Numbered from the stretch's first letter, positions 40,977 to 53,273 are shown. The stretch is DNA of 64,000 nucleotides from Guillardia theta CCMP2712 (GCF_000315625.1 NW_005434663.1:897882-961881); one strand, 5' to 3'. Notes: a model not told the origin generated them from the sequence alone. Numbers and translations are program-made.

Positions 40977-41100
40977 CTGCTTCATTCCTACCCGCGCGCA
41001 TCGAAGCTTTGCTCACTCGCGCGGGTAGGAATGAAGCAGCTTCGATGCAATCGAAGCTTTCTTCTTCTCTACATAAAGAAGCTTCGATTGCATCGAAGCT
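40977..41100. repeat. Two adjacent perfect 22-bp inverted repeats (nested palindrome cluster)
   Basis: 40977-40998 pairs with 41018-41039; 41038-41059 pairs with 41079-41100. Confidence 0.92.
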
Positions 41101-41246
41101 TTCTTCTTTTGGTATGTCGAATTATTGATTTAGTCACTGTTTACTATCATGTAGAGAGGGAGAGAAAGGGCAGAAGGTTTGACCTTGAATGAACACTGAT
41201 ACTAATGATTACACTGAGAGTACATGGAATTGTGTGATACCAGAGG

Positions 41247-44200
41247 CTAGTCTTTGTCCCACAAGTCCTGAAGGAGGGCCCGCCCCTTCTTGGCCTTGGC
41301 TCCCTTCTGCAATCCACCCATGTCGAACAAAGAAGCAGTAGGAAGGGACGTGAGGTCACATGGAGCCTGAACCTCCGGAGGTGTTGGCTCCTTCACTGGC
41401 TCCTTTCCACGCTTGTCACTGCCGCCGTCTCTCCTCGCCTGCACGTCCGTCCTGAGCGAAGAAGGTCAGCTCAACTCGAGTCCTGCTGGCCGTGATTACC
41501 TTGACGGTGATACTCGCTTACTTTCGGGTTGAAGGAACTGACGGGCTTTCTCACCCAGAAAAGTCAAAATTCGATCTTTCAGGTTGGAAGTGCTGATCTG
41601 CAGAGAGACAAGTCAGGTAGGAGGAGCAGAGGGCAAGGGACGAGTTACCATATGAACCGACTTCAGGTCGAGGATGGTCGGCCATGTGTAGACAACGTCG
41701 AGCAGCTCTCTGCGCAGGGAGGTCAGCAACGGGGAGGACTGGAGTAGACGGACATACGTTCTGCGCATCTTCAATACTTCGGCTCGGCAAGGGAAGCCTG
41801 AGGGGTGATCAGATCGACAAGCATGCCAAAGAGCTCAAACCTTTGAGCTCCGGCAAGATAAATCCTGGGTCAGTATTCAGATGCTTCCTCAACAACTCGC
41901 GCTTGTGCCGGGTTTCTCCGTCCATTTCTTCATCACCTTCCACCTCCCCGACTGTCTCTGGGTTGAATTCTTTGCCTCCTCCCTGCCTCTTCGCGTCTGT
42001 AAAGCCCAGCAGTCTCTCTGCAACACTTTTCCTGCAAGCGGCTTCATTAACTTCCTCCCTGCCGGTCGTTCCGCTCTCAATTCCCCCACTCGCGTTCCGT
42101 TGATCTCCAGCGACATCGAGTGGAGGAGGAGGGTTCCGTGGCAGGTTTCTGCTAACCTCCTCCTTCTCCCCCCCATTGTCACTTCGGTTGGGTCGCTGAA
42201 ATCCAGTCGGAGGATGCGGAGGTTGGACTTGACTGATAGCCTCACCCTCCGTCGGATCACACGAGCGATTGGAAGTCTTGGGAGGCTGGACACGCGATGG
42301 CAGAGAAGCAAGGAGCTGAGTCGAAAGCGCGATCAAATCATCGGAGGAAGCTCCTCCAATGCGCCCTCGTGGACGGGCGACTGGGTCTTCAGGTCTTGAG
42401 ATCGTCTCAATGCTATTCCATGTCAACGGCTGTATCGTCCTAACACAGCAAGGAGGACCTGATGGGGGCTGTCGACGGATGAAAGCTTGCCTGGGTCTTG
42501 TTTGATCGGGAGATACTGACAAAGTATCAGTCTTTCTGCCTACTCCAACAGGGCAGATACAGATTCCTGCAGGCAGGGCACCTCACAATCCCTACAGCCT
42601 CAAGTTTACCTCTGCACTTGTTGCATGTCTGACCATTGCTGTGAGCGCGAGCTGAGCAGGAAAGGGTTCAAGTCATACCGTGTATCCACAAGAACAAAAT
42701 GACGAGTTTTGATTATCAATCTTCTCTTCACAACACAACTGGCATGTTTGAGCGCCAGACGAGTGAGACTCTTCGCATTCCACTTGCTGTCGGTCGACTT
42801 GTTGTGTAGTCGTGTTGTCGACACGGAGCCCCGAGATGTCTTGGCGCTTGCGGAGAAGACGAAAAGCCTCATCAGCAGACAATGATGCTTCACTCCTTCC
42901 CGAACCAGTATTGTTCACGTATGTTTGCTCTCTCCCACCCTTGGATCCGAACTGCTGTCTAATAACATCCAAGAGGTTCTTGTGACGGGGAACTCTGCCA
43001 GCTTGTGAGTTCGTCCTGAAGAGCTAGCGAAGATACTCACTCTGTCGTTTCCCACAGATGCGGCAGCCTCACTCCCTCCTTGAGAGTCTCCTCTTCCTCC
43101 TCCTTGGGTTTGACTTGGTCTCTTTCTCTCTCCCGCGCCAACCTGGCAGCTTCTATCGACTTATATTGTTCCTCCCGTTGATCTCTGAGTGCCTTGTTGT
43201 CGTTTCATTCGGATTCTTCCTGTCACAAAACAACATGGTTCACCTGTCGATGACCTTCAAGGTCAGCCATGAGCGCATCAGTGTTCCCATTGCTGGGAAG
43301 AAATCTCAGTCAAAACCCTTGTTCCAAATCGACGACTCACTAGGCTTTCGACCGCTCTTCGAATTCTCGTGTCATTTCTTGAAACATCTCATTGCTTGAG
43401 GGATGTCAATAACTTCTGAAGAATGAAATGTCGGATGTTACATTGTAGTGTTCTCGATGTGTTTCACTTCTTTACGTCCTCTGTGAATTCGCGAATGACA
43501 TTTCAAGGTCATCTGATTTCATTCTTGAGTTCATGGCCACAGTGTATGTCAACCGTCAATGCAACCTCTCTCAGCTTCGCCAAATGTTCATCTTTCAACC
43601 CCGTGATGCCAAGGCTTCTCTGCCTTTCAAACTTATCGACAATCTCTTGAACCCCTTTCTCCTTGTGCTGCCTGCAAAGTTTCAGTCTTGGCGGGCCGGT
43701 TGGCGTGGTTACCGGTAGAGCTTCTCTGCCTCGCCTGAAATGATCTGGCTTGGACTATATTTCTTTGTCCTCTTCAACACTCGTTTTCAAACCCAGCAAG
43801 TCTCACCGGAGTCACAAGATTTCTCAGGATCTTCTCTTCGCTGACGTAGCCAACCTGCAGGAAGACTCGTTCTCATGAGAAAGTCCCTAGCGCAGGACAA
43901 CAATTCTTGCCTCCTTCTCCAACACATTCGCAGTCGGATTGAGCCTATGCCATAGCTCCGGGCTGAATGATGATATCACTTTAGAGTGACCCAGTAAGAC
44001 AAGATAATTTACTTAGCAACGAAGGATTCTTCCAGCTGAGACATTCGCTCCGGTATCCTGTAAGAAACATGTCGGCCACAGCTCAAGGTGAGTGTCTGGC
44101 GTACATGAGCGTGTTGTATCTATCCGGGATGTTCACAGCTCTCCTCTTGACATCCTGCGATCTTTCCTGTGGCTGTCCGAACCCCATAAAAAAACGACTG

Positions 44201-44382
44201 GCAAAATTTCTGCAGCATGATACCTGCGACCAGCGTTTGTGTGTACGAGGGCGATTAACCGCTAGAGCACTGTTGTGAAACGTGGGCGAGCAGGCCAACA
44301 ACAGCAAGGGAAAGAGGAGCTGCTTTGCGCTTGACGAACATCCTTTTCGTTTCGGAAGAGGGACCAACGGAAACATTTTCAA
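41247..44382 (-). CDS. Hypothetical multi-exon protein (possibly two genes) with signal-like N-terminus
   Basis: Leader ..KQLLFPLLLLACSPTFHNSALA; chain of exon-like ORFs, including a Cys-rich CQLC..CSC segment, ending ..LLQDLWDKD*. Confidence 0.45.
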
Positions 44383-44920
44383 TCAGGAGTTGTACCCGCA
44401 AGCAGAGCTCGTGCCGCGATCATGATCTCGATATACCTAGCGCTGTGTTGTTTTCTTGTCTTGGCGCTCTCGCGCATGCGTTCTCTTCTGCTTCCATCGC
44501 TCCCCTCTTGCCCCCACCATGAAGGCAACATGACCAGCTTCAATTATTACTCAAAATCTCTTTTATTGACTGAAAAAGAAGGACAAACCGTAGCGAACAA
44601 AGGAGGGGGAGGATAGAGCCAACAAACCCGCCTCAATAAAATACTAGGAAACGAAGGAGGCAGCGAAAAAATCAGCGACTTTGAACCAGCGGGCCCGGGC
44701 CTCACTGCGGCACCCGGGCCAGAAAAAAAAGTCAATCATCTAAACTTGTGACGTTTCACCTTGACAGTTCGGAGGAAGGGAATGCAGAGGAACTCGCGGG
44801 TGGAGTGAGGAGGGAGAGGGAGAGGGAGAGAGGGAGAGAGGGAGAGGATGCGGGAGAAGAGAGATGGAGGAGGGTAGTCTTGAAGGAGCAGAGAACGAGT
44901 GAGGAATCACTGCTGCCAGG

Positions 44921-47900
44921 ATGTCTGCAGACTTTGTGTACGTGGACACTGATAAGAAGCGTGAAGAAGAGCCGAATCTCCTCTCGCTCTTCAACTTTGG
45001 CAATGGGAAGAGTGCTGAGAAAGCTGTGGTCAAGAAGCAGAGCAGCAAGAAGCTCGCTGAGCTGCCGCCGCCCGACATTGTGATCACATGTGTGGATGAA
45101 TACGACCCTGTGTTCGTTGGCGAATATGTTCCAGAGGTGCAACGCAGGACAGAGACGCTGACGATAACATGGAACATGTCCTGGAGTGATGTGTTGGACC
45201 TGTTGAAGTTCACTTTCGGAAGGGCTGTCATTTTCCAGTACGAGATCAACAAGATTCCTCGGATCGTCACAGACGAGAACGACTTCGATCAGTTCTGCAA
45301 CTATGCAGAAAGCCAGCACGAAGTGATTCAGGTGCGGATAGTGAGTGCGCTGTACAAGCCGTCGGAATGGATCTCAACACGTGCAGAGAGATTGCCTCCC
45401 ATGCTGGACGTCATGACCAACACGGTCATTTCGCTGCCATTACCGGTGGCCGAGGCAGACGAGGCTACTACTGAAGACGTGCAAGAAGACGAGCTTCCGA
45501 TGGAAAGTTATGTGGAAGAGACCAGCAGGTTTCCGAGTTTCTCGTTCTTTCAAAACCACCCGAAGAAGATCGAGCACCTGATGATCTTCGGGATGGGAGG
45601 CTTTCTGCTATGTTGCGCCGTCATTGTGATTTGCTACTGGAAGCACATTGACACCGTCGCAGCCACTACACTTGCTCTCCCCTTCAATCTTTTCTTCAGC
45701 GCCTTTCTTGTCCGTCAGATGGAGGAAGGGTTCTCCCCCATATTCAAGCTCGGGATCGCTTTCTTTGGCTTCTGGGCATCTTTGGCTGTAGTCATTCTGC
45801 TTTCCTTTGCCCACCAACTCACGCAGATCATTGGAGTCGCTCTGTGGACGATCTCGACCTTCTGGTACTTAGAAGTCATCACCGATGCCTTGGGATGGCC
45901 GGGATGGCTGACGGGGTTCGTCATGTTCAGCCGCTGGGTCAGAGGCGGCTGTGTAGTCTTCGCTGCTCCCATCCCCGAGCCAATCGAGCCCATCACCATC
46001 GTGGGGAAGGAGCCAGACTCGCAGGCGTTCAATGCCCGGGAGTTGATGCACTTGGCAGGGCTGGCGAGGGAAAGGCAGGAGAACGTGAAGTGGAAGAAAC
46101 TCGACAAGTACCTGAAGGACCAGCAGGTTGTTCACGTCTGCCAATGCCTCAACACCCTCTCCCACAAGTCCATGTGGGAGGGGGCGATGGGCAACCCGGT
46201 GGGCCCGCTCGGCCTCGGGATCATTGACAAGAAGTGGGCCCGTCAGCTGCTGAAGTGGCTGACCCGAAAGGGCAATTTCAGTCATGCGATGATGGAGAGG
46301 AAATCAAAACTTGGGATAGGAAAAGTCCTCACTGTGTTTGGGGGAGAGAGCGCAGGGATAATCGAGGTTCAGTGGGAGAATGAGACCAACCAGGTGTTCG
46401 CTGGAAAGAAAGGAGTCTACGAGGTGCTGCTGTATGAGGTCCCTGAGGTGGAGGAGTACAAGTTTTCCGACGGGGTGGATATGAACGTGAATTCCAGATT
46501 CATCTTCAAGTTCTTCACTTTTGTTCGGTTGTTCCTTCCAAAGTTTCTCGGCTGGGTTCTTGTCTGGGCCATCTTCTTTGGCTACTATGGAATGCTCTAC
46601 GTCTTCGAATATTCCATCACGAGTTATTCTGTCTACCAAGCCATGGGCAGCAGTTATGCCATGCCGGGCAGATTGTACAGCGCTGCTCCCGGAAACAAGC
46701 TTTGGCTGCACATTCATTGTAAAGGGTTCACAAAGAGCAACGGCAGCATTCCAGACAAACGCAACGTGGTCAGTCGCCTGCTCCAGAAGCGTCTAAGGCA
46801 AGGAGCGGATCTGACTTTGACTGCAGGTTGTCATCGAGTCAATGGAGCACCTGGGGATGAGCGTGGCTATGGCTCGACTGCAGGATGCGATCGCCCAGTA
46901 CGGGGTAAGAGAGACGCTTCTTCCTCTTGCCGCGACCTGCGAGTGACTGTTGCTATCTTCAGATCTGTTGTGTCTATGACAGGATCGGATATGGTTGGAG
47001 CACCAGCGTCGAGACTTACCAGGAAACTCGGACAAACAGGACGCCGTCTGTCATCGCCTCGGAGCTTCATTATGCTCTCCGCTACGGTCTCGACCCAGAC
47101 TTCAAACGCCCTCTCTTTTACTACAGGAACGTCGTCGACCAGCAGAACCGGACCATTCAGATCGAGTCTCCCATCAACCCCCCCTACCTCCTCCTCGGTT
47201 ACGGAGCTGGCGGGCTGTACGTTCGGCAGTTTGCGCACGACTATCCTGAAGACACGGCTGGACTATTGCTGGTCGATGCACTTCCAGCCATAGGCAACGA
47301 CAAGAACGTGACGTCATCGGTGCAGGGATACCTGAGCTCGTTCGAGCTCTTCATGTGTCAACGCTTCTTGCAGCCCATCGGACTCGTCTACAACTTCCTG
47401 CCTTCCTACGTGACGGGGATCTTCCGGCAGCAGACTTCGGAGCGGCTCAACGGCAATGCCGGCGGCCCGAACGACTATGACGTCATGATCAACTTTATGT
47501 ACAGCAGGTCATGGTGCCCAATTGTAATCGCCGAGTATGATGGAATCTTCAAGCTTGAAGGGATCAAGACGGTAGCAGAAGCGGACAGGAAGGGGTATGA
47601 CGTCCCTACCGTCGTCTGGGCTAGGGAGGACGATTCTATCCTAAACATCAAGTCGACCGACAAGATCTACGACTACAACATCTCAAAGCTCCCCGCCAGT
47701 AGCCTGAGGAGGAGCGCGACTAACGCAACGTCCTCCACGTCCTTGTGCACGGGAGAAGACTGCGTGTCCTGGTTCGACGTGCAAGCAGACCTGGTGAGGT
47801 TGAGCACGAAGCCTTGGATCAACCCCTTCAACGGCAAAGTTCAGATCATGCGAGGAGACGTGCAAAGCTGTGCGACACTCGGCTGCTCCACGTTCACTCC

Positions 47901-50900
47901 GATAGAGAACCCGAATGAGATCACAGATGCTGTCCTCGACCTCTGGCTCATGCTCGGATTCTCCGACAAGTTTCCCTCTGCCCTCTGGTACTTCGAGCTT
48001 GGTGGGAACTATCTTGTTGAGTTCGATGCCGCAACCTTCCGGTCTGACTTGTCTGCGCTCGTCTCGCACGTCGAGGCTAAGAACATCGAGATTGTTGAAG
48101 GACCCACGGAGGGTCTCGCAAGCGACGCCTTCTGGAGCAGCATCACCACGCGCAGGTCGGGGAAGGAAGAGCATCGAAGCTCGTCCAAGCATCTGGACTC
48201 TATCGGCCGGCACTCGCAGCAGCAGCAGCAGGCCAGTCGGCTGCGAAGCACGCTCAACTGGTACTCCGGCCTCGACACGCCCTACGTGCCGATCCGCAAC
48301 GACGGGGCTTATCGAGTCACCATCATTATGTACGGGCACAAGCCCAGAGCCACAGGGTGGGCGGAGGACATCTTGCGAGGGTCAGAGAACAGGAACCTCG
48401 ACACGACGGCGACGGCGAGGCGAGGAGTGTTCATGAAGAAGTGGAGAGTTCTGTCGATCCACGAGAAGTCCTGCAGCGTGAACGTGATCACCAACAATAG
48501 GACTTGCTCGTTCAGTGCCGTAGACCTCTTCACCAGCCTCTACGTCTCCCCGCTCTACTCTTGCCCGCAGAACACTTACCGTCAAGACAAGTCCTGCAAG
48601 ACTTGCGACTTGAGCTCGACGAGCGCGACGGGCTCAACTTCAGTGTCGGACTGCAAGGCCTGCGAGCCTTACTTCCACCTCAGCTGTGACGGCAGGAGCT
48701 GCGAGCGCTGCCCCCTCAACACCATCAGCAACGTCGGGGCCCTCTCGCTGGCAGAGTGCGTGCCGACGAGTCTGTGGAGCATTAAGATGGACGGGCCGAT
48801 CGATCCTCTTGCTCTCCTTCAGCCCGCGTATCCTCAGGCTTCCAGCAGGTCGGCCTTCAACTCCAGCAGCTTCCTGCTCCACATCTCCAACATCAGCGGG
48901 ATCCCCTTGAAACTCATCGCCTTGGAAAGCGTCAGCTACGTCGACAGCTTCACCGCCTCGAGATTCCAGCAGGGACGCGGGCCCAGCATCTTCCAGGTTC
49001 GCTTCGCTTTCCTCTCTCAGGACAAGTCCACCTCGGAAGCGGCGAAAGCTGCTCTACTCGGCCTCGAATGCCCCTCGCCTGCTGCTGGCTGTGCGCTGGT
49101 GGACTACAACAGCACAAGGAGGTCGCTAAGGGACAAACTCTTTGCTGAGTTCCCCGTTGTCAGGTAATGATTCTTCTCCCCTCCTCTGCTCTGCTCTGCT
49201 GTGCCCTCCTCTCCTCTTTTGTTCGACTCCTCGCCGCCCTTGCGCTCTCCTTCCTTCTCCTCCTTCCATGCTACTCTTCTTCCCGTCCCTCTTCATACCC
49301 TGACGGCTCTCCGATGCTGCAGCGTCAAGGCCACCGAAGTCGCCGGGAGGCTGGAAGGCTCTTGTCCGAACCAGCAGTTCGTGCAGACGAGCTACCAGGA
49401 CATCTTCGCAAACGTCTTCTCCTCCACCTACCTCAGCACCAACTTCCGATGCCCCTCCTCTTACTACCGCAGTGGCCCCGAGTGCCTGAGCTGCCCTGAC
49501 ATGAGCTCCAGCGACGCCGGGGCGAGCAAGGTGGAGGACTGCCGGGGGTTCCTTACCATGGTGTTCGCCATGAAGGACGCGAGCGTCACCTTCAACGGTC
49601 GCACTCGCTCGCTGGAGTTCGGGGGCATGCAGGACGCACAGCCGTACGCCTTGAGCCTCATGAACTACACGGGACTGGCTCAGTCGGCTCCTCTCTTCAT
49701 CAAGACTCGAGGGTATGCCCTGCACCCCTACCAGTACATCAACCCCTCCTTCCCTTCCCTCGGCCTCCAGACCATCCGATGCCAGGAGGGATCCAACTGC
49801 TTCAACGCATCGCAAGTGAGCGCATTCTCCTCCTCCTCCTCCTCCTCCTCCTCCTCCTCCTCCTCCTCCTCCTCCTCCCTCTGCTGTGTTCCTTCCCTTT
49901 ATCCTTCGCTTCTTCCTTCTGCTATTCGAACTATCTTGAGCTCCGATACCCCACTTTCGTCCTCTTCCTCTTCTGGTGTAGTTGACTTGCTCTCCTAGTT
50001 CCGTATGGATGTCAGCTCGGCAGTCAACGGGCTCGTGGACGCCAACAGGATTCGCCTGCTGCCTCCCAGCAACTGCGACCTCCTCCCCTCCGGTGTCGTT
50101 GACCCGCTCTGCGGGCCTTGGCCAGGCATCGCACGGAACGACCGACTGGGCGAGTGTGTCTGTGCGGGAGATCTCTGCTACATGACCTTGGGAGCGCCGT
50201 GGGTAAGCGAAGACCTCGGGTACAGGAAAGTTCTGAGTCAGGTGAGTGAGGATAATCAGACCCCTCCCTCCTCTCCCTTCCTTCTCTCCCTCCCTCCTCT
50301 CCCTCCTTTCCCTTCCTCCTCTCCCTCCCTCCTCTCCCTCCTTTCCCTTCCTCCTCTCCCTCCCTCCTCTCCCTCCTTTCCCTTCCTTCTCTCCCTCCCT
50401 CCTCGCCCTCTCTCCCTCCTTCCCTTCCGCCCTCCCTGATTATCTGTCTCGCTCGCTATCTTCACTCTTCTTGCTTGCATATGTCTCACCCTCTCCTCCA
50501 TCATGATGTCCTCCCTGCAGGCTACCAAGGCAGCCAACGCAGCAGACTGTGCGAGGTTGTGCTCGGATGCCCCTGCCGACTGCAACGGCTTCCTCTACTC
50601 GCCCTCCTCCTGGGTCTGCGACCTTCGTTATTTCCTCTCCCTTCCTTCTCTCGGAAACTTCTGCCCCAGCAGCTCCCCAGCATGTATCAGTTTGATCCAG
50701 TCCAAGTACATCGACCTGACGGTCCCCTTCCCCTCCCTTGCGGGCCTCCAGATCTACTGGAAGCCAGCTGACCCCCAGCTCTGCTCTATCGTCACCCAGA
50801 AGTCTCGAGCCTGCAGCAACTCCTCGGCCCTGCCCAACAGAGTCTTCGACGTCGCCGTCGATCCGCTGGTGGGAGGAGCAGGAGGGACGGGCCTGCGCAG

Positions 50901-53273
50901 CCCGTTGGACACCTTCCACGTCATCGTTCGCTTCCATGCTGCGACCGCAACGCTGCTTGGGAAGGTGCAGGATATTCTGCAGGCGCGGGGGGTCCAGTCG
51001 TCGTATGCTCAGCCCTCGGGTCTCAACGACTTCCTCCGCAAGTATCAGGTCGTTCAGGTGTACACGTCCGACCAGAAGGCTCTCCTGGGCGGCAAGTCGG
51101 CAGAAGGAAGTTTGCTGGGCTCGCGCTACATCGACTGCATCGGCAAGACGTGCGGGCCCGTTACCCTCAGCTCCTCCGCATGGTGCAACGACACAGTCGC
51201 ACCGCTCAACAAGACAAGGTGCGGGGGCGACGCGACTGTGAAGCCTGTCTGCAAGCAGATATGGGAGGCAAACAAGTGGATATCCGTCGTCATCTGCCCC
51301 AACGGCCTTCCCCCCACCTGCCAGGTCTCCGGCTCCCCCGTTTGCTCTGCCGCCAACCTCTTCGACGGGAACGCCTCGACCTTCTGGCCGGCCTACAAGA
51401 GCGATGGGGTCGTGACTGACTTCGTCACCGTCACCTTCACCAAGCCGGGAGGAAGCGTCACCTTCGTGGAGCTCACCAGGGTTGACCTGCAGGAGCGGCA
51501 GGAGGTGGCGACGGGGCTGGCGGACTCGTTCAGCGAGTTGGAGCTTGACTTCAGTGACGGGAGCTCGCAGAAGGTTCAGTTGGCCGGGTACGGCACAGGC
51601 ACGGGGGTCACGGCAGCCGTGCAGACGTTCTACCTGCGACCAGTCGTGACTTCCTCCGTCACCATCCGCGTCTCTCCTCTCTCCTACCTTGAGAGCGTCA
51701 GGAACCCCCAGAGGCGCCTCGGGCTCGCCTCAGCTGACTTCTTCGGCCAGCCGTTTGACACCGTCCGCAACGTGACGGCCGTTGACTTCCTGCGGTCGAC
51801 CTACTCCTCCGCCAAGTGCCCTCCCAACACCTTCAGCGACTCCTCCCTCAAGTTCTGCCAGCTCTGCCCCTTCCCCCTCGTCAGCCCTGCTGGCTCCTCC
51901 TCCCTCTCCAACTGCTCCTGCCCGGCATGCAGCGACGGTCGAGTCCACTGGCAGGCAGACGAGAAGTGCGACGACGGCAATCAGATCGATGGCGATGGCT
52001 GCGACCACAACTGCCTCATCGAGCCTCTCCACATCTGCTTCGGCCCTCTCACCGCCACCAAGTTCGGCAACCCGATCGCCTCCTACTCGACACCGGACAA
52101 GTGCATCAGGATCGGGTCTGAGTGGACCAACTTCGGCGAGGCCGCATGGCCAGCGAGGTTCGGCGCTGCTGCCGTCTTCCACTCCAACGCTCTCCGACTG
52201 ACAGGAGGGATGGGCTCGCAGCTCCAGACTGAGTTCGGCACCACCTACTACGAGTACACCGACGGCACCCTGTGCACAGTGCAGGAGCCATCGGACTCTT
52301 GCGCGCTCCCGAGGGGGTCGAGCTACCTTTCGTGGTCCCTTGCTCCTTTCGCTCCCGCCGATCCCTCTACCACCTGGTCCCCCCGCGCCTTCCACGGCCT
52401 CGTCTCCTTCAAAGGCTTCATGTGGCTGTCCGGGGGCATCTTCCGCACACAGGGGCAGAGCGGGTGGGTGGAGGGAGGCTCCTTCAACGACGTTTGGAAG
52501 AGTCTTGGCTCCGCTGAGACCCAAGGCAGCGCGTCCGTCGTGCCATGGCTGCTGGTGACGTCAGGGGCCAGCTGGGTGGCTCGTGGAAGACATGTCTCCC
52601 TCGTGTTTGCGGGGTCCATGTGGATCCTGGGAGGAGAGCGGAGGGATCGGAGCAGCACGGCAGGTGGGGGCGTATTGAACTATCAGACAGAGTACCGCAA
52701 CGACGTGTGGAGGTCGCAGGACGGTGCCCAGTGGTTGCTGGTCACACAGAACCCGAGCTGGAACGCTCGTTCGGGCCACACAGCGGCAGTGCATGAGGGG
52801 AGCAACCAGATCTTTCTGATGGGGGGACGAGACGCCACCCGGTACTACAACGACATCTGGAGGAGCGCCGACGGCAAGACCTGGACCATGGTGACTGGGT
52901 CGGCGCTGTGGAGTGCAAGATGGTTGCACGCCAGCGTCTTCTTCGAGGACAGTCTGTGGGTCATCGGTGGTCACTTCTGCCTCACTTCCTCCAGCCAGCC
53001 CTGCACGACGGAGACTGCTGGAACTTTCTACAACGACGTGTACCTGAGTGCTGATGGAACCAAGTGGCTCGTCTCCACGTCCTCAGCAGGTCGACATTTG
53101 CCTGCCCTCCTCGTTCTTCTCTTTGACTTTTCTCTCCCGCAGGTTGGAAGGCTCGGGCTGGACATTCCGCTGTGGTCTTTGTGGGGCCAGTGCAGTCGGA
53201 CCTATGGATTATAGGGGGTTACTACGGCTTTCAACAGGCTCTCAACGACACATGGCGAGCTTTCAAGTTCTGA
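44921..53273 (+). CDS. ~2,500-aa multidomain membrane protein: PB1-like, multi-TM, MIB/HERC2-like, TM, inactive alpha/beta-hydrolase, GCC2/GCC3 Cys repeats, PAN/apple, discoidin-like, Myxococcus Cys-rich repeat, kelch-like propeller
   Basis: Seven exons joined in frame by GT-AG introns (~46769-46827, 46905-46962, 49164-49322, 49816-49998, 50242-50520, 53090-53142); motifs YDRIGYGWS, GYGAGG, CPQNTY..GSTSVSDC, AADCARLC..CNGFLY, EKCDDGNQIDGDGCDHNC, WxxRxxH..MWILGG..NDVWRSQDG. Confidence 0.82.

What the first reader, a model, noticed from the sequence alone, without database searches (positions are those of the whole stretch)
44921..53273. Giant receptor-like membrane protein with an unusual domain string
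Seen: ~2,500 aa over seven in-frame exons. A PB1-like N-terminus (TITWNMSWSDVLDLLKFTFGRAVIFQYE..VTDENDFD) precedes ~4 TMs, a loop resembling MIB/HERC2 (GIGKVLTV..IEVQWENETNQVFAGKKGVYEVLLY) and one more TM. A ~1,900-aa Cys- and sequon-rich region follows: hydrolase fold, GCC2/GCC3 repeats, PAN/apple, a discoidin-like segment, a Myxococcus Cys-rich repeat and a terminal kelch-like propeller, with no C-terminal anchor. Inference: cytosolic scaffold modules coupled to a huge ligand/glycan-binding ectodomain, i.e. a sensory, adhesion or prey-recognition receptor. I know of no described protein with this architecture. The PB1 and MIB/HERC2 calls are tentative.
Basis: partly seen in the sequence, partly recalled or inferred. 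Interest (0 to 1): 0.8.

Follow-up and report, generated by a model that had tools for sequence, protein, structure and literature searches.

The report
Giant PB1-tailed cryptophyte surface protein
This is a real gene of about 2,520 residues in the alga Guillardia theta: a five-pass membrane protein with a PB1-type scaffold domain inside the cell and a huge outside part made of a catalytically dead esterase-like domain, sugar-binding-type modules and a Kelch propeller, from a small undescribed family whose function is still unknown.

Summary
Window 44921-53273 (+) carries a seven-exon gene with GT-AG introns only, in Guillardia theta CCMP2712. It encodes 2,520 aa, or 2,507 aa with an alternative in-frame donor.

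Relatives support a single gene. One has a 1,934-codon uninterrupted ORF running colinearly from exon 1 into exon 6. A 2,211-aa G. theta paralog (XP_005828270.1) and three further environmental contigs keep the same order and match the exon junctions and the C-terminus.

- **PB1 call:** confirmed at fold level (VIA Z 11.3-11.8; the top 15 Foldseek hits are all PB1).
- **MIB/HERC2 call:** not established. The domain is a generic SH3/Tudor-like barrel (Z below 5, no profile hit).
- **Alpha/beta-hydrolase:** real, but the nucleophile Ser is Gly here (GYGAG). Short paralogs keep GHSVG.
- **Kelch and DUF4215:** firm.
- **PAN, discoidin and ephrin-receptor-like repeats:** weak but consistent.

Four TMs plus one, and 65 Cys in the 1,958-aa tail, fit an N-in/C-out topology. 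No paper or Pfam family describes this architecture. The receptor or adhesion function is inference only.

The parts
44921..46768 (+). Exon 1 (aa 1-616): start codon, PB1-like domain, TM1-4, cytosolic loop domain, TM5, start of the hydrolase domain
   Evidence: ORF and donor GTCAGT at 46769. Residues 49-616 align colinearly to P0003 residues 38-616.
45062..45355 (+). PB1-like beta-grasp domain (aa 48-145)
   Evidence: The AF2 model has pLDDT above 90 with bb-a-bb-a-b order. Foldseek ranks 1-15 are all PB1 domains, best NBR1 2bkf at E 6e-4 and TMt 0.76. VIA gives Z 11.8, 11.7 and 11.3 to MAP2K5, NBR1 and MEKK3 PB1, rmsd 1.7-2.1 over 80-82 residues. No Pfam PB1 hit.
45569..45889 (+). Four-helix transmembrane bundle (aa 217-240, 245-262, 271-297, 300-323), followed by a short interfacial helix at 329-342
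   Evidence: Hydropathy and AF2 helices with pLDDT 82-95. Conserved in the family alignment A1.
45983..46435 (+). Cytosolic loop domain (aa 355-505): helices plus an SH3/Tudor-like small barrel (aa 466-505).
   Evidence: AF2 models. Foldseek best is the HECTD1 CPH domain at E 0.38, and Mib-herc2 2dk3 at E 0.93. VIA best is MIB1 4xi6 at Z 4.8, tied with Tudor and KOW domains. The atlas search returned Tudor, FeoA and CarD barrels. No Pfam or PDB profile hit.
46499..46606 (+). TM5 (aa 527-562)
   Evidence: Hydropathy and the long AF2 helix 527-576.
46827..46904 (+). Exon 2 (26 aa, 'VVIESMEHLG...AQYG'): the first strand region of the hydrolase fold
   Evidence: Acceptor CTGCAG and donor GTAAGA. 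It is 58-77% identical and contiguous with its neighbours in P0003, P0061, L006 and L017.
46963..49163 (+). Exon 3: alpha/beta-hydrolase-like domain (to about 47997), unassigned middle part with a low-complexity stretch, ephrin-receptor-like unit 1 (48562-48663), unassigned segment
   Evidence: Window Pfam hits are weak: Abhydrolase_1 E 0.036 and Hydrolase_4 E 0.032. The family profile hits only alpha/beta hydrolases in the PDB, best E 0.0014. Abhydrolase_1 passes its cut-off in ortholog P0061 and in the C9 paralog.
47197..47211 (+). Nucleophile elbow G-Y-G-A-G: the catalytic Ser position is Gly
   Evidence: Alignment A2 shows GYGAG in the window, GFGAG in P0003, GNSAG in the C61 paralog and GHSVG in the short members. 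P0061 has AHSAG.
49323..49815 (+). Exon 4: ephrin-receptor-like unit 2 (49450-49542) plus an unassigned beta-rich segment
   Evidence: Splice sites. Colinear with P0003 residues 1502-1691 and P0004 residues 1098-1245. Motif found.
49999..50241 (+). Exon 5 (81 aa; short alternative ends at 50202)
   Evidence: Two in-frame donors, GTAAGC at 50203 and GTGAGT at 50242. The spacing and the 'LG' motif in P0003, P0004 and P0057 favour the long form.
50242..50520 (+). Intron 5 (CT-rich).
   Evidence: No letters of 50294-50381 were sent to any search tool.
50521..53089 (+). Exon 6: PAN/apple-like (about 50521-50730), unassigned part, discoidin-like (51304-51765), ephrin-receptor-like unit 3 (51817-51930), DUF4215 (51907-52014), Kelch blades 1-5 (about 52108-53089)
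   Evidence: Window Pfam hits: Kelch_KLHDC2 2e-10, Kelch_1 24.2 bits (cut-off 20.1), DUF4215 3e-4, PAN_1 0.002, F5_F8_type_C 0.015. Orthologs: Kelch 93 bits, DUF4215 27.1 and 30.6 bits (both pass), PAN_1 0.002. Atlas features score 0.96 to F5/8-C clusters.
53143..53273 (+). Exon 7: sixth Kelch blade and the stop codon; no hydrophobic tail
   Evidence: Donor GTCGAC and acceptor CCGCAG with a split Gly codon. It is 52% identical to the last 42 residues of P0057, which ends at the same point.

Best explanation
Shown: one G. theta gene encodes a protein of about 2,520 aa. Its order is a PB1-fold domain, an acidic linker, a four-helix TM bundle, a loop of about 200 aa containing an SH3/Tudor-like barrel, a fifth TM, an alpha/beta-hydrolase-fold domain lacking the nucleophile Ser, then about 1,500 aa of Cys-rich mosaic. 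The mosaic holds three ephrin-receptor-like units, PAN-like, discoidin-like and DUF4215 modules, and a six-blade Kelch propeller. There is no C-terminal anchor.

Inferred: the N-terminus and the loop face the cytosol, and everything after TM5 faces outside (or the lumen on the way there). The protein most likely works as a cell-surface binding protein. The dead hydrolase pocket and the lectin-type modules would bind a ligand, glycan or the cell's own surface layer (periplast or matrix). The cytosolic PB1 domain, by head-to-tail PB1 contacts, would cluster the protein or recruit a PB1 partner to pass the state inward. The SH3-like barrel would offer a second docking site.

The conserved core of the family is PB1 + 4 TM + 1 TM + hydrolase. 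The giant members add the loop barrel and the mosaic tail.
For: Gene and junctions.

One polypeptide in relatives:
- P0003 is a single 1,934-codon ORF colinear from E1 to early E6.
- Paralog P0004 (XP_005828270.1, 2,211 aa) is colinear from E1 to E7.
- Genomic L017 is colinear from E1 to E6.
- P0057 covers E4 to E7 with the same C-terminus.
- P0061 covers E1 to E3.

Domains:
- PB1 fold.
- TM helices.
- Hydrolase fold and Ser-to-Gly change.
- Outside-type modules.
- Cys and sequon asymmetry, 65 Cys in 1,958 aa against 5 in 419 aa.
- Short family members carrying PB1 + TM + hydrolase only (P0026, G. theta contigs C145 and C9).
Against: - There is no transcript, protein, localisation or binding data for G. 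theta.
- Topology is predicted from helices and composition only. No dedicated topology predictor was available.
- The positive-inside signal around the TMs is weak.
- PB1 has no sequence-profile support, no conserved beta-1 Lys, and only a partial acidic motif (my reading of alignment A1). PB1-type pairing is therefore not assured.
- PAN, discoidin and ephrin-receptor-like hits are all below Pfam cut-offs in the window.
- About 600 aa of the tail have no assignment.
Confidence: 0.5

Rival explanations
1. The protein is a structural anchor rather than a sensor. It is a membrane-embedded foot that ties the plasma membrane to the cryptophyte surface periplast or extracellular matrix. The PB1 domain polymerises under the membrane only to build a lattice, and no signal is passed.
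For: The ectodomain is huge and consists of adhesive-type modules. Some PB1 domains form filaments: p62 and NBR1 PB1 filaments are among the matches. G. theta carries many other giant ORFs sharing the Kelch, DUF4215 and Cys-rich modules.
Against: No localisation or proteomic data exist. Paper searches found no periplast proteome listing such a protein. Short family members have the PB1 + TM + hydrolase core with an intact GHSVG elbow and no adhesive tail, which suggests the core has a role other than anchoring.
Confidence: 0.2
2. The protein is an endomembrane protein. The Cys-rich part faces the lumen of Golgi, vacuole or extrusive organelles (ejectisomes), and the protein acts as a cargo or matrix receptor there rather than at the cell surface.
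For: The predicted topology is the same as for a surface protein. There is no way to tell the final membrane from sequence. Ephrin-receptor-like repeats also occur in endosomal proteins such as ELAPOR1, with a weak Pfam hit to TNFR_ELAPOR1_6th at E 0.19.
Against: I did not look for sorting motifs in the cytosolic parts and recognised none. PAN, discoidin and Kelch/attractin-type modules are mostly found on cell surfaces (general knowledge, not tested here).
Confidence: 0.2
3. The protein is an active membrane-bound ecto-hydrolase (esterase or lipase), and the tail targets it to a substrate surface.
For: It has the alpha/beta-hydrolase fold. Relatives keep Ser in the elbow: GHSVG in the short members, AHSAG in P0061 and GNSAG in the C61 paralog. 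Abhydrolase_1 passes its cut-off in two relatives.
Against: In this protein the nucleophile is Gly (GYGAG), as in P0003 (GFGAG). The His-containing 'NHPEG' stretch shared by the short members is absent here.
Confidence: 0.05
4. The model is an artefact that merges two or more neighbouring genes: an N-terminal membrane protein, and one or more secreted proteins.
For: No G. theta transcript evidence was obtained. None of the three word searches nor the representative search returned a protein identical to the window's exons.
Against: A relative carries E1 to early E6 in a single uninterrupted 1,934-codon ORF. The G. theta paralog is annotated as one 2,211-aa protein. The order is colinear in four further contigs. 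After TM5 there is no start-like or signal-peptide-like break, and every junction keeps the frame with GT-AG introns.
Confidence: 0.04

Closest known systems
XP_005828270.1, hypothetical protein GUITHDRAFT_112751 (G. theta paralog, contig C61)
   Same: It has the same colinear architecture from the PB1-like domain to the terminal Kelch propeller, at 31-46% identity exon by exon.
   Different: It is uncharacterised. It keeps Ser in the elbow (GNSAG). Its annotated model skips about 300 aa of hydrolase core that is open in the genome. It carries an extra conserved N-terminal motif that is absent here.
PB1 scaffold domains (NBR1, p62, MEKK2/3-MEK5, Par6-aPKC, Cdc24/Bem1)
   Same: The beta-grasp fold with PB1 topology is the same, and PB1 entries are the best structural matches by two aligners.
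   Different: Known PB1 proteins are soluble. Here the domain heads a five-pass membrane protein. There is no Pfam PB1 match, no conserved beta-1 Lys and only a partial acidic motif.
Neuroligins and other cholinesterase-like adhesion molecules
   Same: In both, an alpha/beta-hydrolase fold that has lost its catalytic Ser is used outside the cell on a membrane protein (general knowledge for neuroligins; the Ser-to-Gly change here is).
   Different: Neuroligins have a different hydrolase subfamily (cholinesterase type, against the Abhydrolase_1/6 type here), a single-pass anchor after the domain, and no PB1, PAN, discoidin or Kelch modules. There is no sequence relationship.
Attractin-type receptors (extracellular Kelch propeller plus Cys-rich modules)
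   Same: A Kelch propeller matches Beta-prop_ATRN-LZTR1 (E 7.7e-7 in the window, 54 bits in P0057) and sits next to Cys-rich repeats in an ectodomain.
   Different: Attractin is a type I single-pass protein with CUB, C-type lectin, PSI and laminin-EGF modules. Here the propeller is the free C-terminus of a multi-pass protein.
Plant alpha/beta-hydrolase receptors (D14, KAI2, GID1)
   Same: In both, a hydrolase fold is used to perceive a ligand. GID1 is likewise non-catalytic (general knowledge). This is a working analogy only.
   Different: The plant receptors are soluble, intracellular and small. No homology beyond the superfamily was shown.

Membership tests
PB1 domain (PF00564) | Ubiquitin-like beta-grasp fold with PB1 strand and helix order | tested here: met
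   AF2 pLDDT is above 90 for aa 50-145. PB1 entries fill Foldseek ranks 1-15 and VIA ranks 1-11, with Z 8.3-11.8.
PB1 domain (PF00564) | Match to the family's sequence profile | tested here: not met
   No Pfam family at E<=1 for exon 1.
PB1 domain (PF00564) | OPCA acidic motif (type A) and/or invariant beta-1 Lys (type B) | tested here: inconclusive
   In alignment A1 a conserved 'Y...E..FD.FC' stretch resembles the second half of OPCA. The first acidic cluster is variable, and no Lys is conserved in 'PPDIxxxCxD'. This was read by eye, not scored.
PB1 domain (PF00564) | PB1-PB1 pairing or polymerisation | not testable with these tools
   Needs pull-down, yeast two-hybrid or SEC-MALS.
MIB/HERC2 domain (PF06701) | Match to the family's sequence profile | tested here: not met
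   No hit at E<=10 in the window loop or in seven relatives. The family profile A3 finds no MIB or HERC2 chain in the PDB.
MIB/HERC2 domain (PF06701) | Fold closer to MIB/HERC2 than to other SH3-like barrels | tested here: inconclusive
   MIB1 4xi6 and 4tse score Z 4.8 and 4.7, and 2dk3 scores Z 4.2, tied with Tudor, KOW and PWWP domains. Foldseek gives E 0.38-0.93. The atlas rows are Tudor, FeoA and CarD.
Alpha/beta-hydrolase fold (Abhydrolase_1/6) | Profile match | tested here: met
   The window is below cut-off at 14 bits. Ortholog P0061 scores 27.9 bits and the C9 paralog 27.4 bits against a cut-off of 25.8. The family profile hits only alpha/beta hydrolases in the PDB.
Alpha/beta-hydrolase fold (Abhydrolase_1/6) | Nucleophile elbow Sm-x-Ser-x-Sm | tested here: not met
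   The window has G-Y-G-A-G. Relatives have GHSVG, AHSAG or GNSAG. This domain is a pseudo-enzyme.
Alpha/beta-hydrolase fold (Abhydrolase_1/6) | Catalytic acid and His | tested here: inconclusive
   No invariant His appears in A2. The 'NHPEG' stretch of the short members is absent here. This domain was not modelled.
Kelch beta-propeller | Repeated Kelch motifs matching Pfam | tested here: met
   Kelch_1 scores 24.2 bits against a cut-off of 20.1, and Kelch_KLHDC2 gives E 2e-10. P0057 scores 93 bits. Six 'hhhxGG...W' blades were read, the last one in exon 7.
DUF4215 (Myxococcus cysteine-rich repeat, PF13948) | Profile match | tested here: met
   The window scores 21.4 bits, below the cut-off of 27. 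At the homologous site P0004 scores 30.6 bits and P0057 27.1 bits, both passing.
PAN/apple (PF00024) | Profile match | tested here: inconclusive
   Scores are 18.2-18.6 bits (E about 0.002) at the same position in the window, P0003 and P0057, all below the cut-off of 21.4.
F5/8 type C, discoidin (PF00754) | Profile match or fold | tested here: inconclusive
   Pfam gives E 0.015 and 15.9 bits against a cut-off of 28.2. The family profile finds nothing in the PDB. Language-model features score 0.96 and 0.95 to F5/8-C clusters, which account for 27 of the 30 hits.
Ephrin_rec_like / GCC2-GCC3 (PF07699) | Profile match | tested here: inconclusive
   Pfam gives E 0.98. Atlas features score 0.86 and 0.83, a lead only. 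Three 'CPxxT[YF]...CxxCP...G[AS]...C' units are conserved in the paralogs.

The most novel reading that the evidence does not exclude
The PB1 + 4TM + 1TM + alpha/beta-hydrolase core may define a new class of transmembrane receptors. In this reading an extracellular hydrolase-fold pocket perceives a small ester or lipid cue. The pocket would be catalytic in the short members and a pure binder in this one. Occupancy would be relayed across a five-helix membrane domain to a cytosolic PB1 switch that assembles a signalling scaffold. That would be a membrane-bound, outward-facing counterpart of the plant D14/KAI2/GID1 principle. The giant members would add lectin-type modules for co-recognition of a surface.
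Probability: 0.12. Interest if true: 0.8.

Novelty: new variant of a known kind. Interest (0 to 1): 0.5.

Why it matters
Cell-surface biology of cryptophytes is almost unexplored at the molecular level. That includes periplast attachment, cell-cell or mating recognition, and being recognised by the ciliates and dinoflagellates that steal their plastids.

This gene gives a concrete, conserved candidate. It is a family, seen so far only in G. theta and in unnamed environmental or culture samples, that joins a cytosolic PB1 scaffold module to an outward-facing hydrolase-fold domain through a five-helix membrane part. I found no description of this combination. If the PB1 domain really pairs or polymerises, it would be the first PB1 module I know of that is built into a multi-pass membrane protein.

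The split between members with and without the catalytic Ser offers a natural experiment on how an enzyme fold becomes a binding module. If the protein is only one more lineage-specific mosaic surface protein, its value is mainly for annotation.

Tried and rejected
1. **Reads.** There is therefore no expression or splice evidence from G. theta. They lie in intron 5.
2. **Transcript search.** An exact 30-nt pattern from exon 2 in metagenome contigs found no match.
3. **Upstream exon.** I looked for the 'SSALEIAG..FP.TGA.VRAVP' motif of the paralog clade in 41000-45100 and found nothing.
4. **MIB/HERC2.** Rejected as a membership call.
5. **PDB sequence searches.** Exons 3 and 6 alone gave nothing useful. 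The discoidin family profile also gave nothing.
6. **TM bundle fold matches.** Matches to LRRC8, SemiSWEET and designed bundles score Z 7-8, below the level that means anything for helical bundles. I made no channel claim.
7. **Papers.** There was no hit for the paralog's locus tag, and nothing relevant for the domain combinations or periplast proteomes.
8. **The joined protein.** The spliced protein was joined only inside local scripts, to check frame and length and to count hydropathy, Cys and sequons. It was never searched or folded. All searches and folds were done exon by exon by reference, so domains split by introns (hydrolase start, last Kelch blade) were not modelled as wholes.
9. **Structure predictions.** Only two were available, and both went to the cytosolic part. 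No ectodomain segment was folded.

Full report
**What is there.** The window is G000:C11:897882-961881 of an 87,145,349-base, 669-contig assembly. A paralog found later carries the NCBI name 'hypothetical protein GUITHDRAFT_112751 [Guillardia theta CCMP2712]', so the genome is G. theta. That agrees with earlier notes of this scan.

On the + strand, frame 1 is open from 44903 to 47290. Frame 0 is open from 46909 to 53211 except for three single stops.

**Gene model.** Reading the splice sites gives a model of seven exons with GT-AG introns only:
- E1 44921-46768
- E2 46827-46904
- E3 46963-49163
- E4 49323-49815
- E5 49999-50241
- E6 50521-53089
- E7 53143-53273

The introns are 58, 58, 159, 183, 279 and 53 nt. 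The product is 2,520 aa. E5 has a second in-frame donor at 50203, which would give 2,507 aa. The spacing and a shared 'LG' motif in three relatives favour the longer form. The ATG at 44921 follows an in-frame stop 18 nt upstream, and I found no upstream exon.

These places lie inside intron 5, and I sent none of their letters to any search tool afterwards. An exon-2 pattern found nothing in metagenome contigs.

The case for one gene therefore rests on relatives, and it is strong:
- **P0003.** The exhaustive representative search with exon 1 returned 38 proteins. Among them was P0003, a 1,934-aa single ORF on four contigs of 7.3-7.6 kb from JGI sample 3300017228. The four contigs are identical for 7,202 nt and then branch. 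P0003 aligns colinearly to E1, E2, E3, E4, E5 and the start of E6. The E1|E2, E2|E3 and E4|E5 junctions are exactly contiguous at 616|617, 642|643 and 1691|1692. The rest of E6 follows on the same contigs in another frame, after what looks like one retained short intron. Whether these contigs are cDNA or intron-poor DNA, in that organism the PB1/TM head and the tail are one reading frame.
- **P0004.** This is XP_005828270.1, 2,211 aa, on G. theta contig C61. It is colinear from E1 to E7.
- **L017.** This 11.6-kb genomic scaffold (ENA) is colinear from E1 to E6 with many introns.
- **L006.** This Logan contig carries E1, E2 and the start of E3.
- **P0061.** It covers late E1, E2 and E3 without a break.
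- **P0057.** This 1,109-aa protein covers late E4 to E7, bridges E6|E7, and ends at the same residue as my model. This confirms that there is no C-terminal anchor.

**The cytosolic side.** Exon 1 has no Pfam hit at E<=1. I aligned it with 33 relatives (A1) and folded it (mean pLDDT 72).

Residues 50-145 fold with pLDDT above 90 as strand-strand-helix-strand-strand-helix-strand. Foldseek against the PDB puts PB1 domains at ranks 1-15, with NBR1 2bkf at E 6e-4, TMt 0.76 and rmsd 2.7. The independent VIA search of 48,161 chains puts PB1 domains at ranks 1-11. The best are MAP2K5 at Z 11.8, NBR1 at 11.7 and MEKK3 at 11.3, with rmsd 1.7-2.1 over 80-82 residues. Generic ubiquitin-like domains come lower, at about Z 7.

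Membership in the sequence family is not shown. I see no conserved beta-1 lysine and only half of an acidic OPCA-like motif in A1.

The model then gives four TM helices (217-240, 245-262, 271-297, 300-323), a short helix (329-342), a well-folded loop domain (355-505) and a long helix at 527-576 that holds TM5.

I folded the loop alone (pLDDT 73). It consists of helices followed by a small four- or five-stranded barrel. Its best matches are weak:
- Foldseek: HECTD1 CPH domain at E 0.38, and Mib-herc2 2dk3 at E 0.93.
- VIA: MIB1 4xi6 at Z 4.8 and 4tse at Z 4.7, tied with Tudor, KOW and PWWP barrels.
- Atlas shapes: Tudor, FeoA and CarD.
- Pfam finds no MIB_HERC2 at E<=10 in the window loop or in seven relatives. 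The family profile finds no such chain in the PDB.

I therefore call the loop domain an SH3/Tudor-like barrel, and the MIB/HERC2 label unproven.

**The outside part.** After TM5 the chain has 1,958 aa with 65 Cys and 19 N-x-S/T sequons. The cytosolic parts have 5 Cys in 419 aa. There is no further hydrophobic segment.

*Hydrolase domain.* It spans late E1, E2 and E3 residues 1-345. It scores weakly in the window (Abhydrolase_1 E 0.036). The family profile hits only alpha/beta hydrolases in the PDB, all at the nucleophile elbow (best E 0.0014). Abhydrolase_1 passes its cut-off in ortholog P0061 (27.9 bits) and in the C9 paralog (27.4 bits).

The elbow reads G-Y-G-A-G here and G-F-G-A-G in P0003. 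It reads GNSAG in the C61 paralog, AHSAG in P0061, and GHSVG in the three short members. This copy has therefore lost its nucleophile, in agreement with the separate note s1-450916. The 'NHPEG' His stretch of the short members is also missing here.

*Further modules:*
- **Ephrin-receptor-like units.** There are three 'CPxxT[YF]..CxxCP..G[AS]..C' units. Pfam Ephrin_rec_like gives only E 0.98, and atlas features score 0.86.
- **PAN-like module.** It scores about 18 bits in the window, P0003 and P0057 at the same position, always under the cut-off.
- **Discoidin-like segment.** Pfam gives E 0.015, there is no PDB profile hit, and atlas features score 0.96.
- **DUF4215.** It is under the cut-off here but passes in P0004 and P0057.
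- **Kelch propeller.** It has six blades, and the last blade is exon 7. Kelch_1 passes in the window, and P0057 scores 93 bits.

About 600 aa remain unassigned. No ectodomain segment was folded, because both predictions went to the cytosolic part. No search or fold was run on the joined protein. It was joined only in local scripts, for frame, length and composition.

**The family.** G. theta has this gene and the C61 paralog. It also has shorter members on C145 and C9 (PB1-like domain about 1 kb upstream of a hydrolase domain), and a PB1-like match on C10. P0026 (873 aa) shows the short form in one ORF: PB1-like domain, TMs, a short loop and the hydrolase.

The conserved core is thus PB1 + 4 TM + 1 TM + hydrolase. 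The giant members add the loop barrel and the mosaic tail.

Across 1.84 billion representatives only 38 proteins match exon 1, most of them fragments from metagenomes. Taxon names are not available for them. No paper mentions the paralog's tag or this domain combination.

**How it probably works.** What is shown is the gene, the domain order, the PB1 fold, the dead elbow and the family.

The topology is inferred. PB1 and SH3-like domains are cytosolic kinds of module. PAN, discoidin, DUF4215 and ephrin-receptor-like repeats are outside kinds. An odd number of TMs with no signal peptide gives N-in/C-out.

On that basis I take the protein to be a surface binding protein, either a sensor or an adhesion or matrix link. 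Its dead hydrolase pocket and lectin-type modules would bind something outside, and its PB1 domain would cluster it or recruit a partner inside (confidence 0.5).

Rivals:
- A purely structural periplast anchor (0.2).
- A lumenal role in internal organelles (0.2).
- An active ecto-hydrolase (0.05), which the Gly at the nucleophile argues against.
- A merged gene model (0.04), which the single ORF in P0003 argues against.

**Novelty and score.** Every module except the TM part belongs to a known kind, and protists are rich in lineage-specific mosaic surface proteins, so I do not rate this as categorically new. The combination of a PB1 head, a five-helix membrane part and an outward-facing hydrolase fold is undescribed as far as my searches reach, and it defines a small family. 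I rate it a new variant of a known kind, with interest 0.5.

The most novel reading still open is a new class of transmembrane hydrolase-fold receptors with a PB1 output. I give it probability about 0.12.

Noticed in passing
G000:C61:446328-447269 (= L015:4329-5270): The annotated paralog XP_005828270.1 (2,211 aa) jumps from the exon-2 equivalent (aa 594-619) to the equivalent of E3 residue 295 (aa 667). The genome has an open 324-aa frame there that is 44% identical to E3 residues 4-327. The public model probably lacks about 300 aa of the hydrolase core.
   Followed up: partly
window 44921-53273: None of the three word searches nor the exhaustive representative search returned a protein identical to this gene's exons, although the paralog from the same genome is present. 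Either this gene has no public protein model, or its records are withheld by the tools.
   Followed up: no
window 49816-49998 and 50242-50520: Introns 4 and 5 are CT-rich. Intron 4 starts with a (TCC) run of about 19 copies near 49828-49885. The frame stays open through much of both introns, so a naive ORF reading adds false poly-Ser and Pro-rich 'linkers'.
   Followed up: partly
G000:C145:111536-113640, G000:C9:918924-920985 (-), G000:C10:582785-582946: These are short family members with a PB1-like domain followed within about 1 kb by a hydrolase domain carrying an intact GHSVG elbow and an 'NHPEG' His stretch. C10 matched only the PB1-like part. They may be the active-enzyme form of the family.
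   Followed up: partly
alignment A1 (P0004, P0007, P0015, P0017, P0019, P0021, P0025, P0038): The paralog clade shares a conserved N-terminal motif ('..H/SAVTSALEIAGDDVxFPxTGAxVRAVP..') ahead of the PB1-like domain. The window gene lacks this motif, and it was not found in the 4 kb upstream.
   Followed up: partly
G000:C25:450445-451266 (-), G000:C25:156467-157213 (+): Open frames of 10,988 and 10,646 codons carry Kelch repeats 39-44% identical to those of this gene. G. theta holds several still larger mosaic ORFs sharing the Kelch, DUF4215 and Cys-rich modules.
   Followed up: no
L008:5855-5965: The relative's contigs change frame between the 1,934-codon ORF and the next ORF, across a stretch bounded by CAG|GTCTGT and CCCCGCAG|G. 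It looks like one retained intron of about 85 nt in an otherwise intron-free copy.
   Followed up: partly
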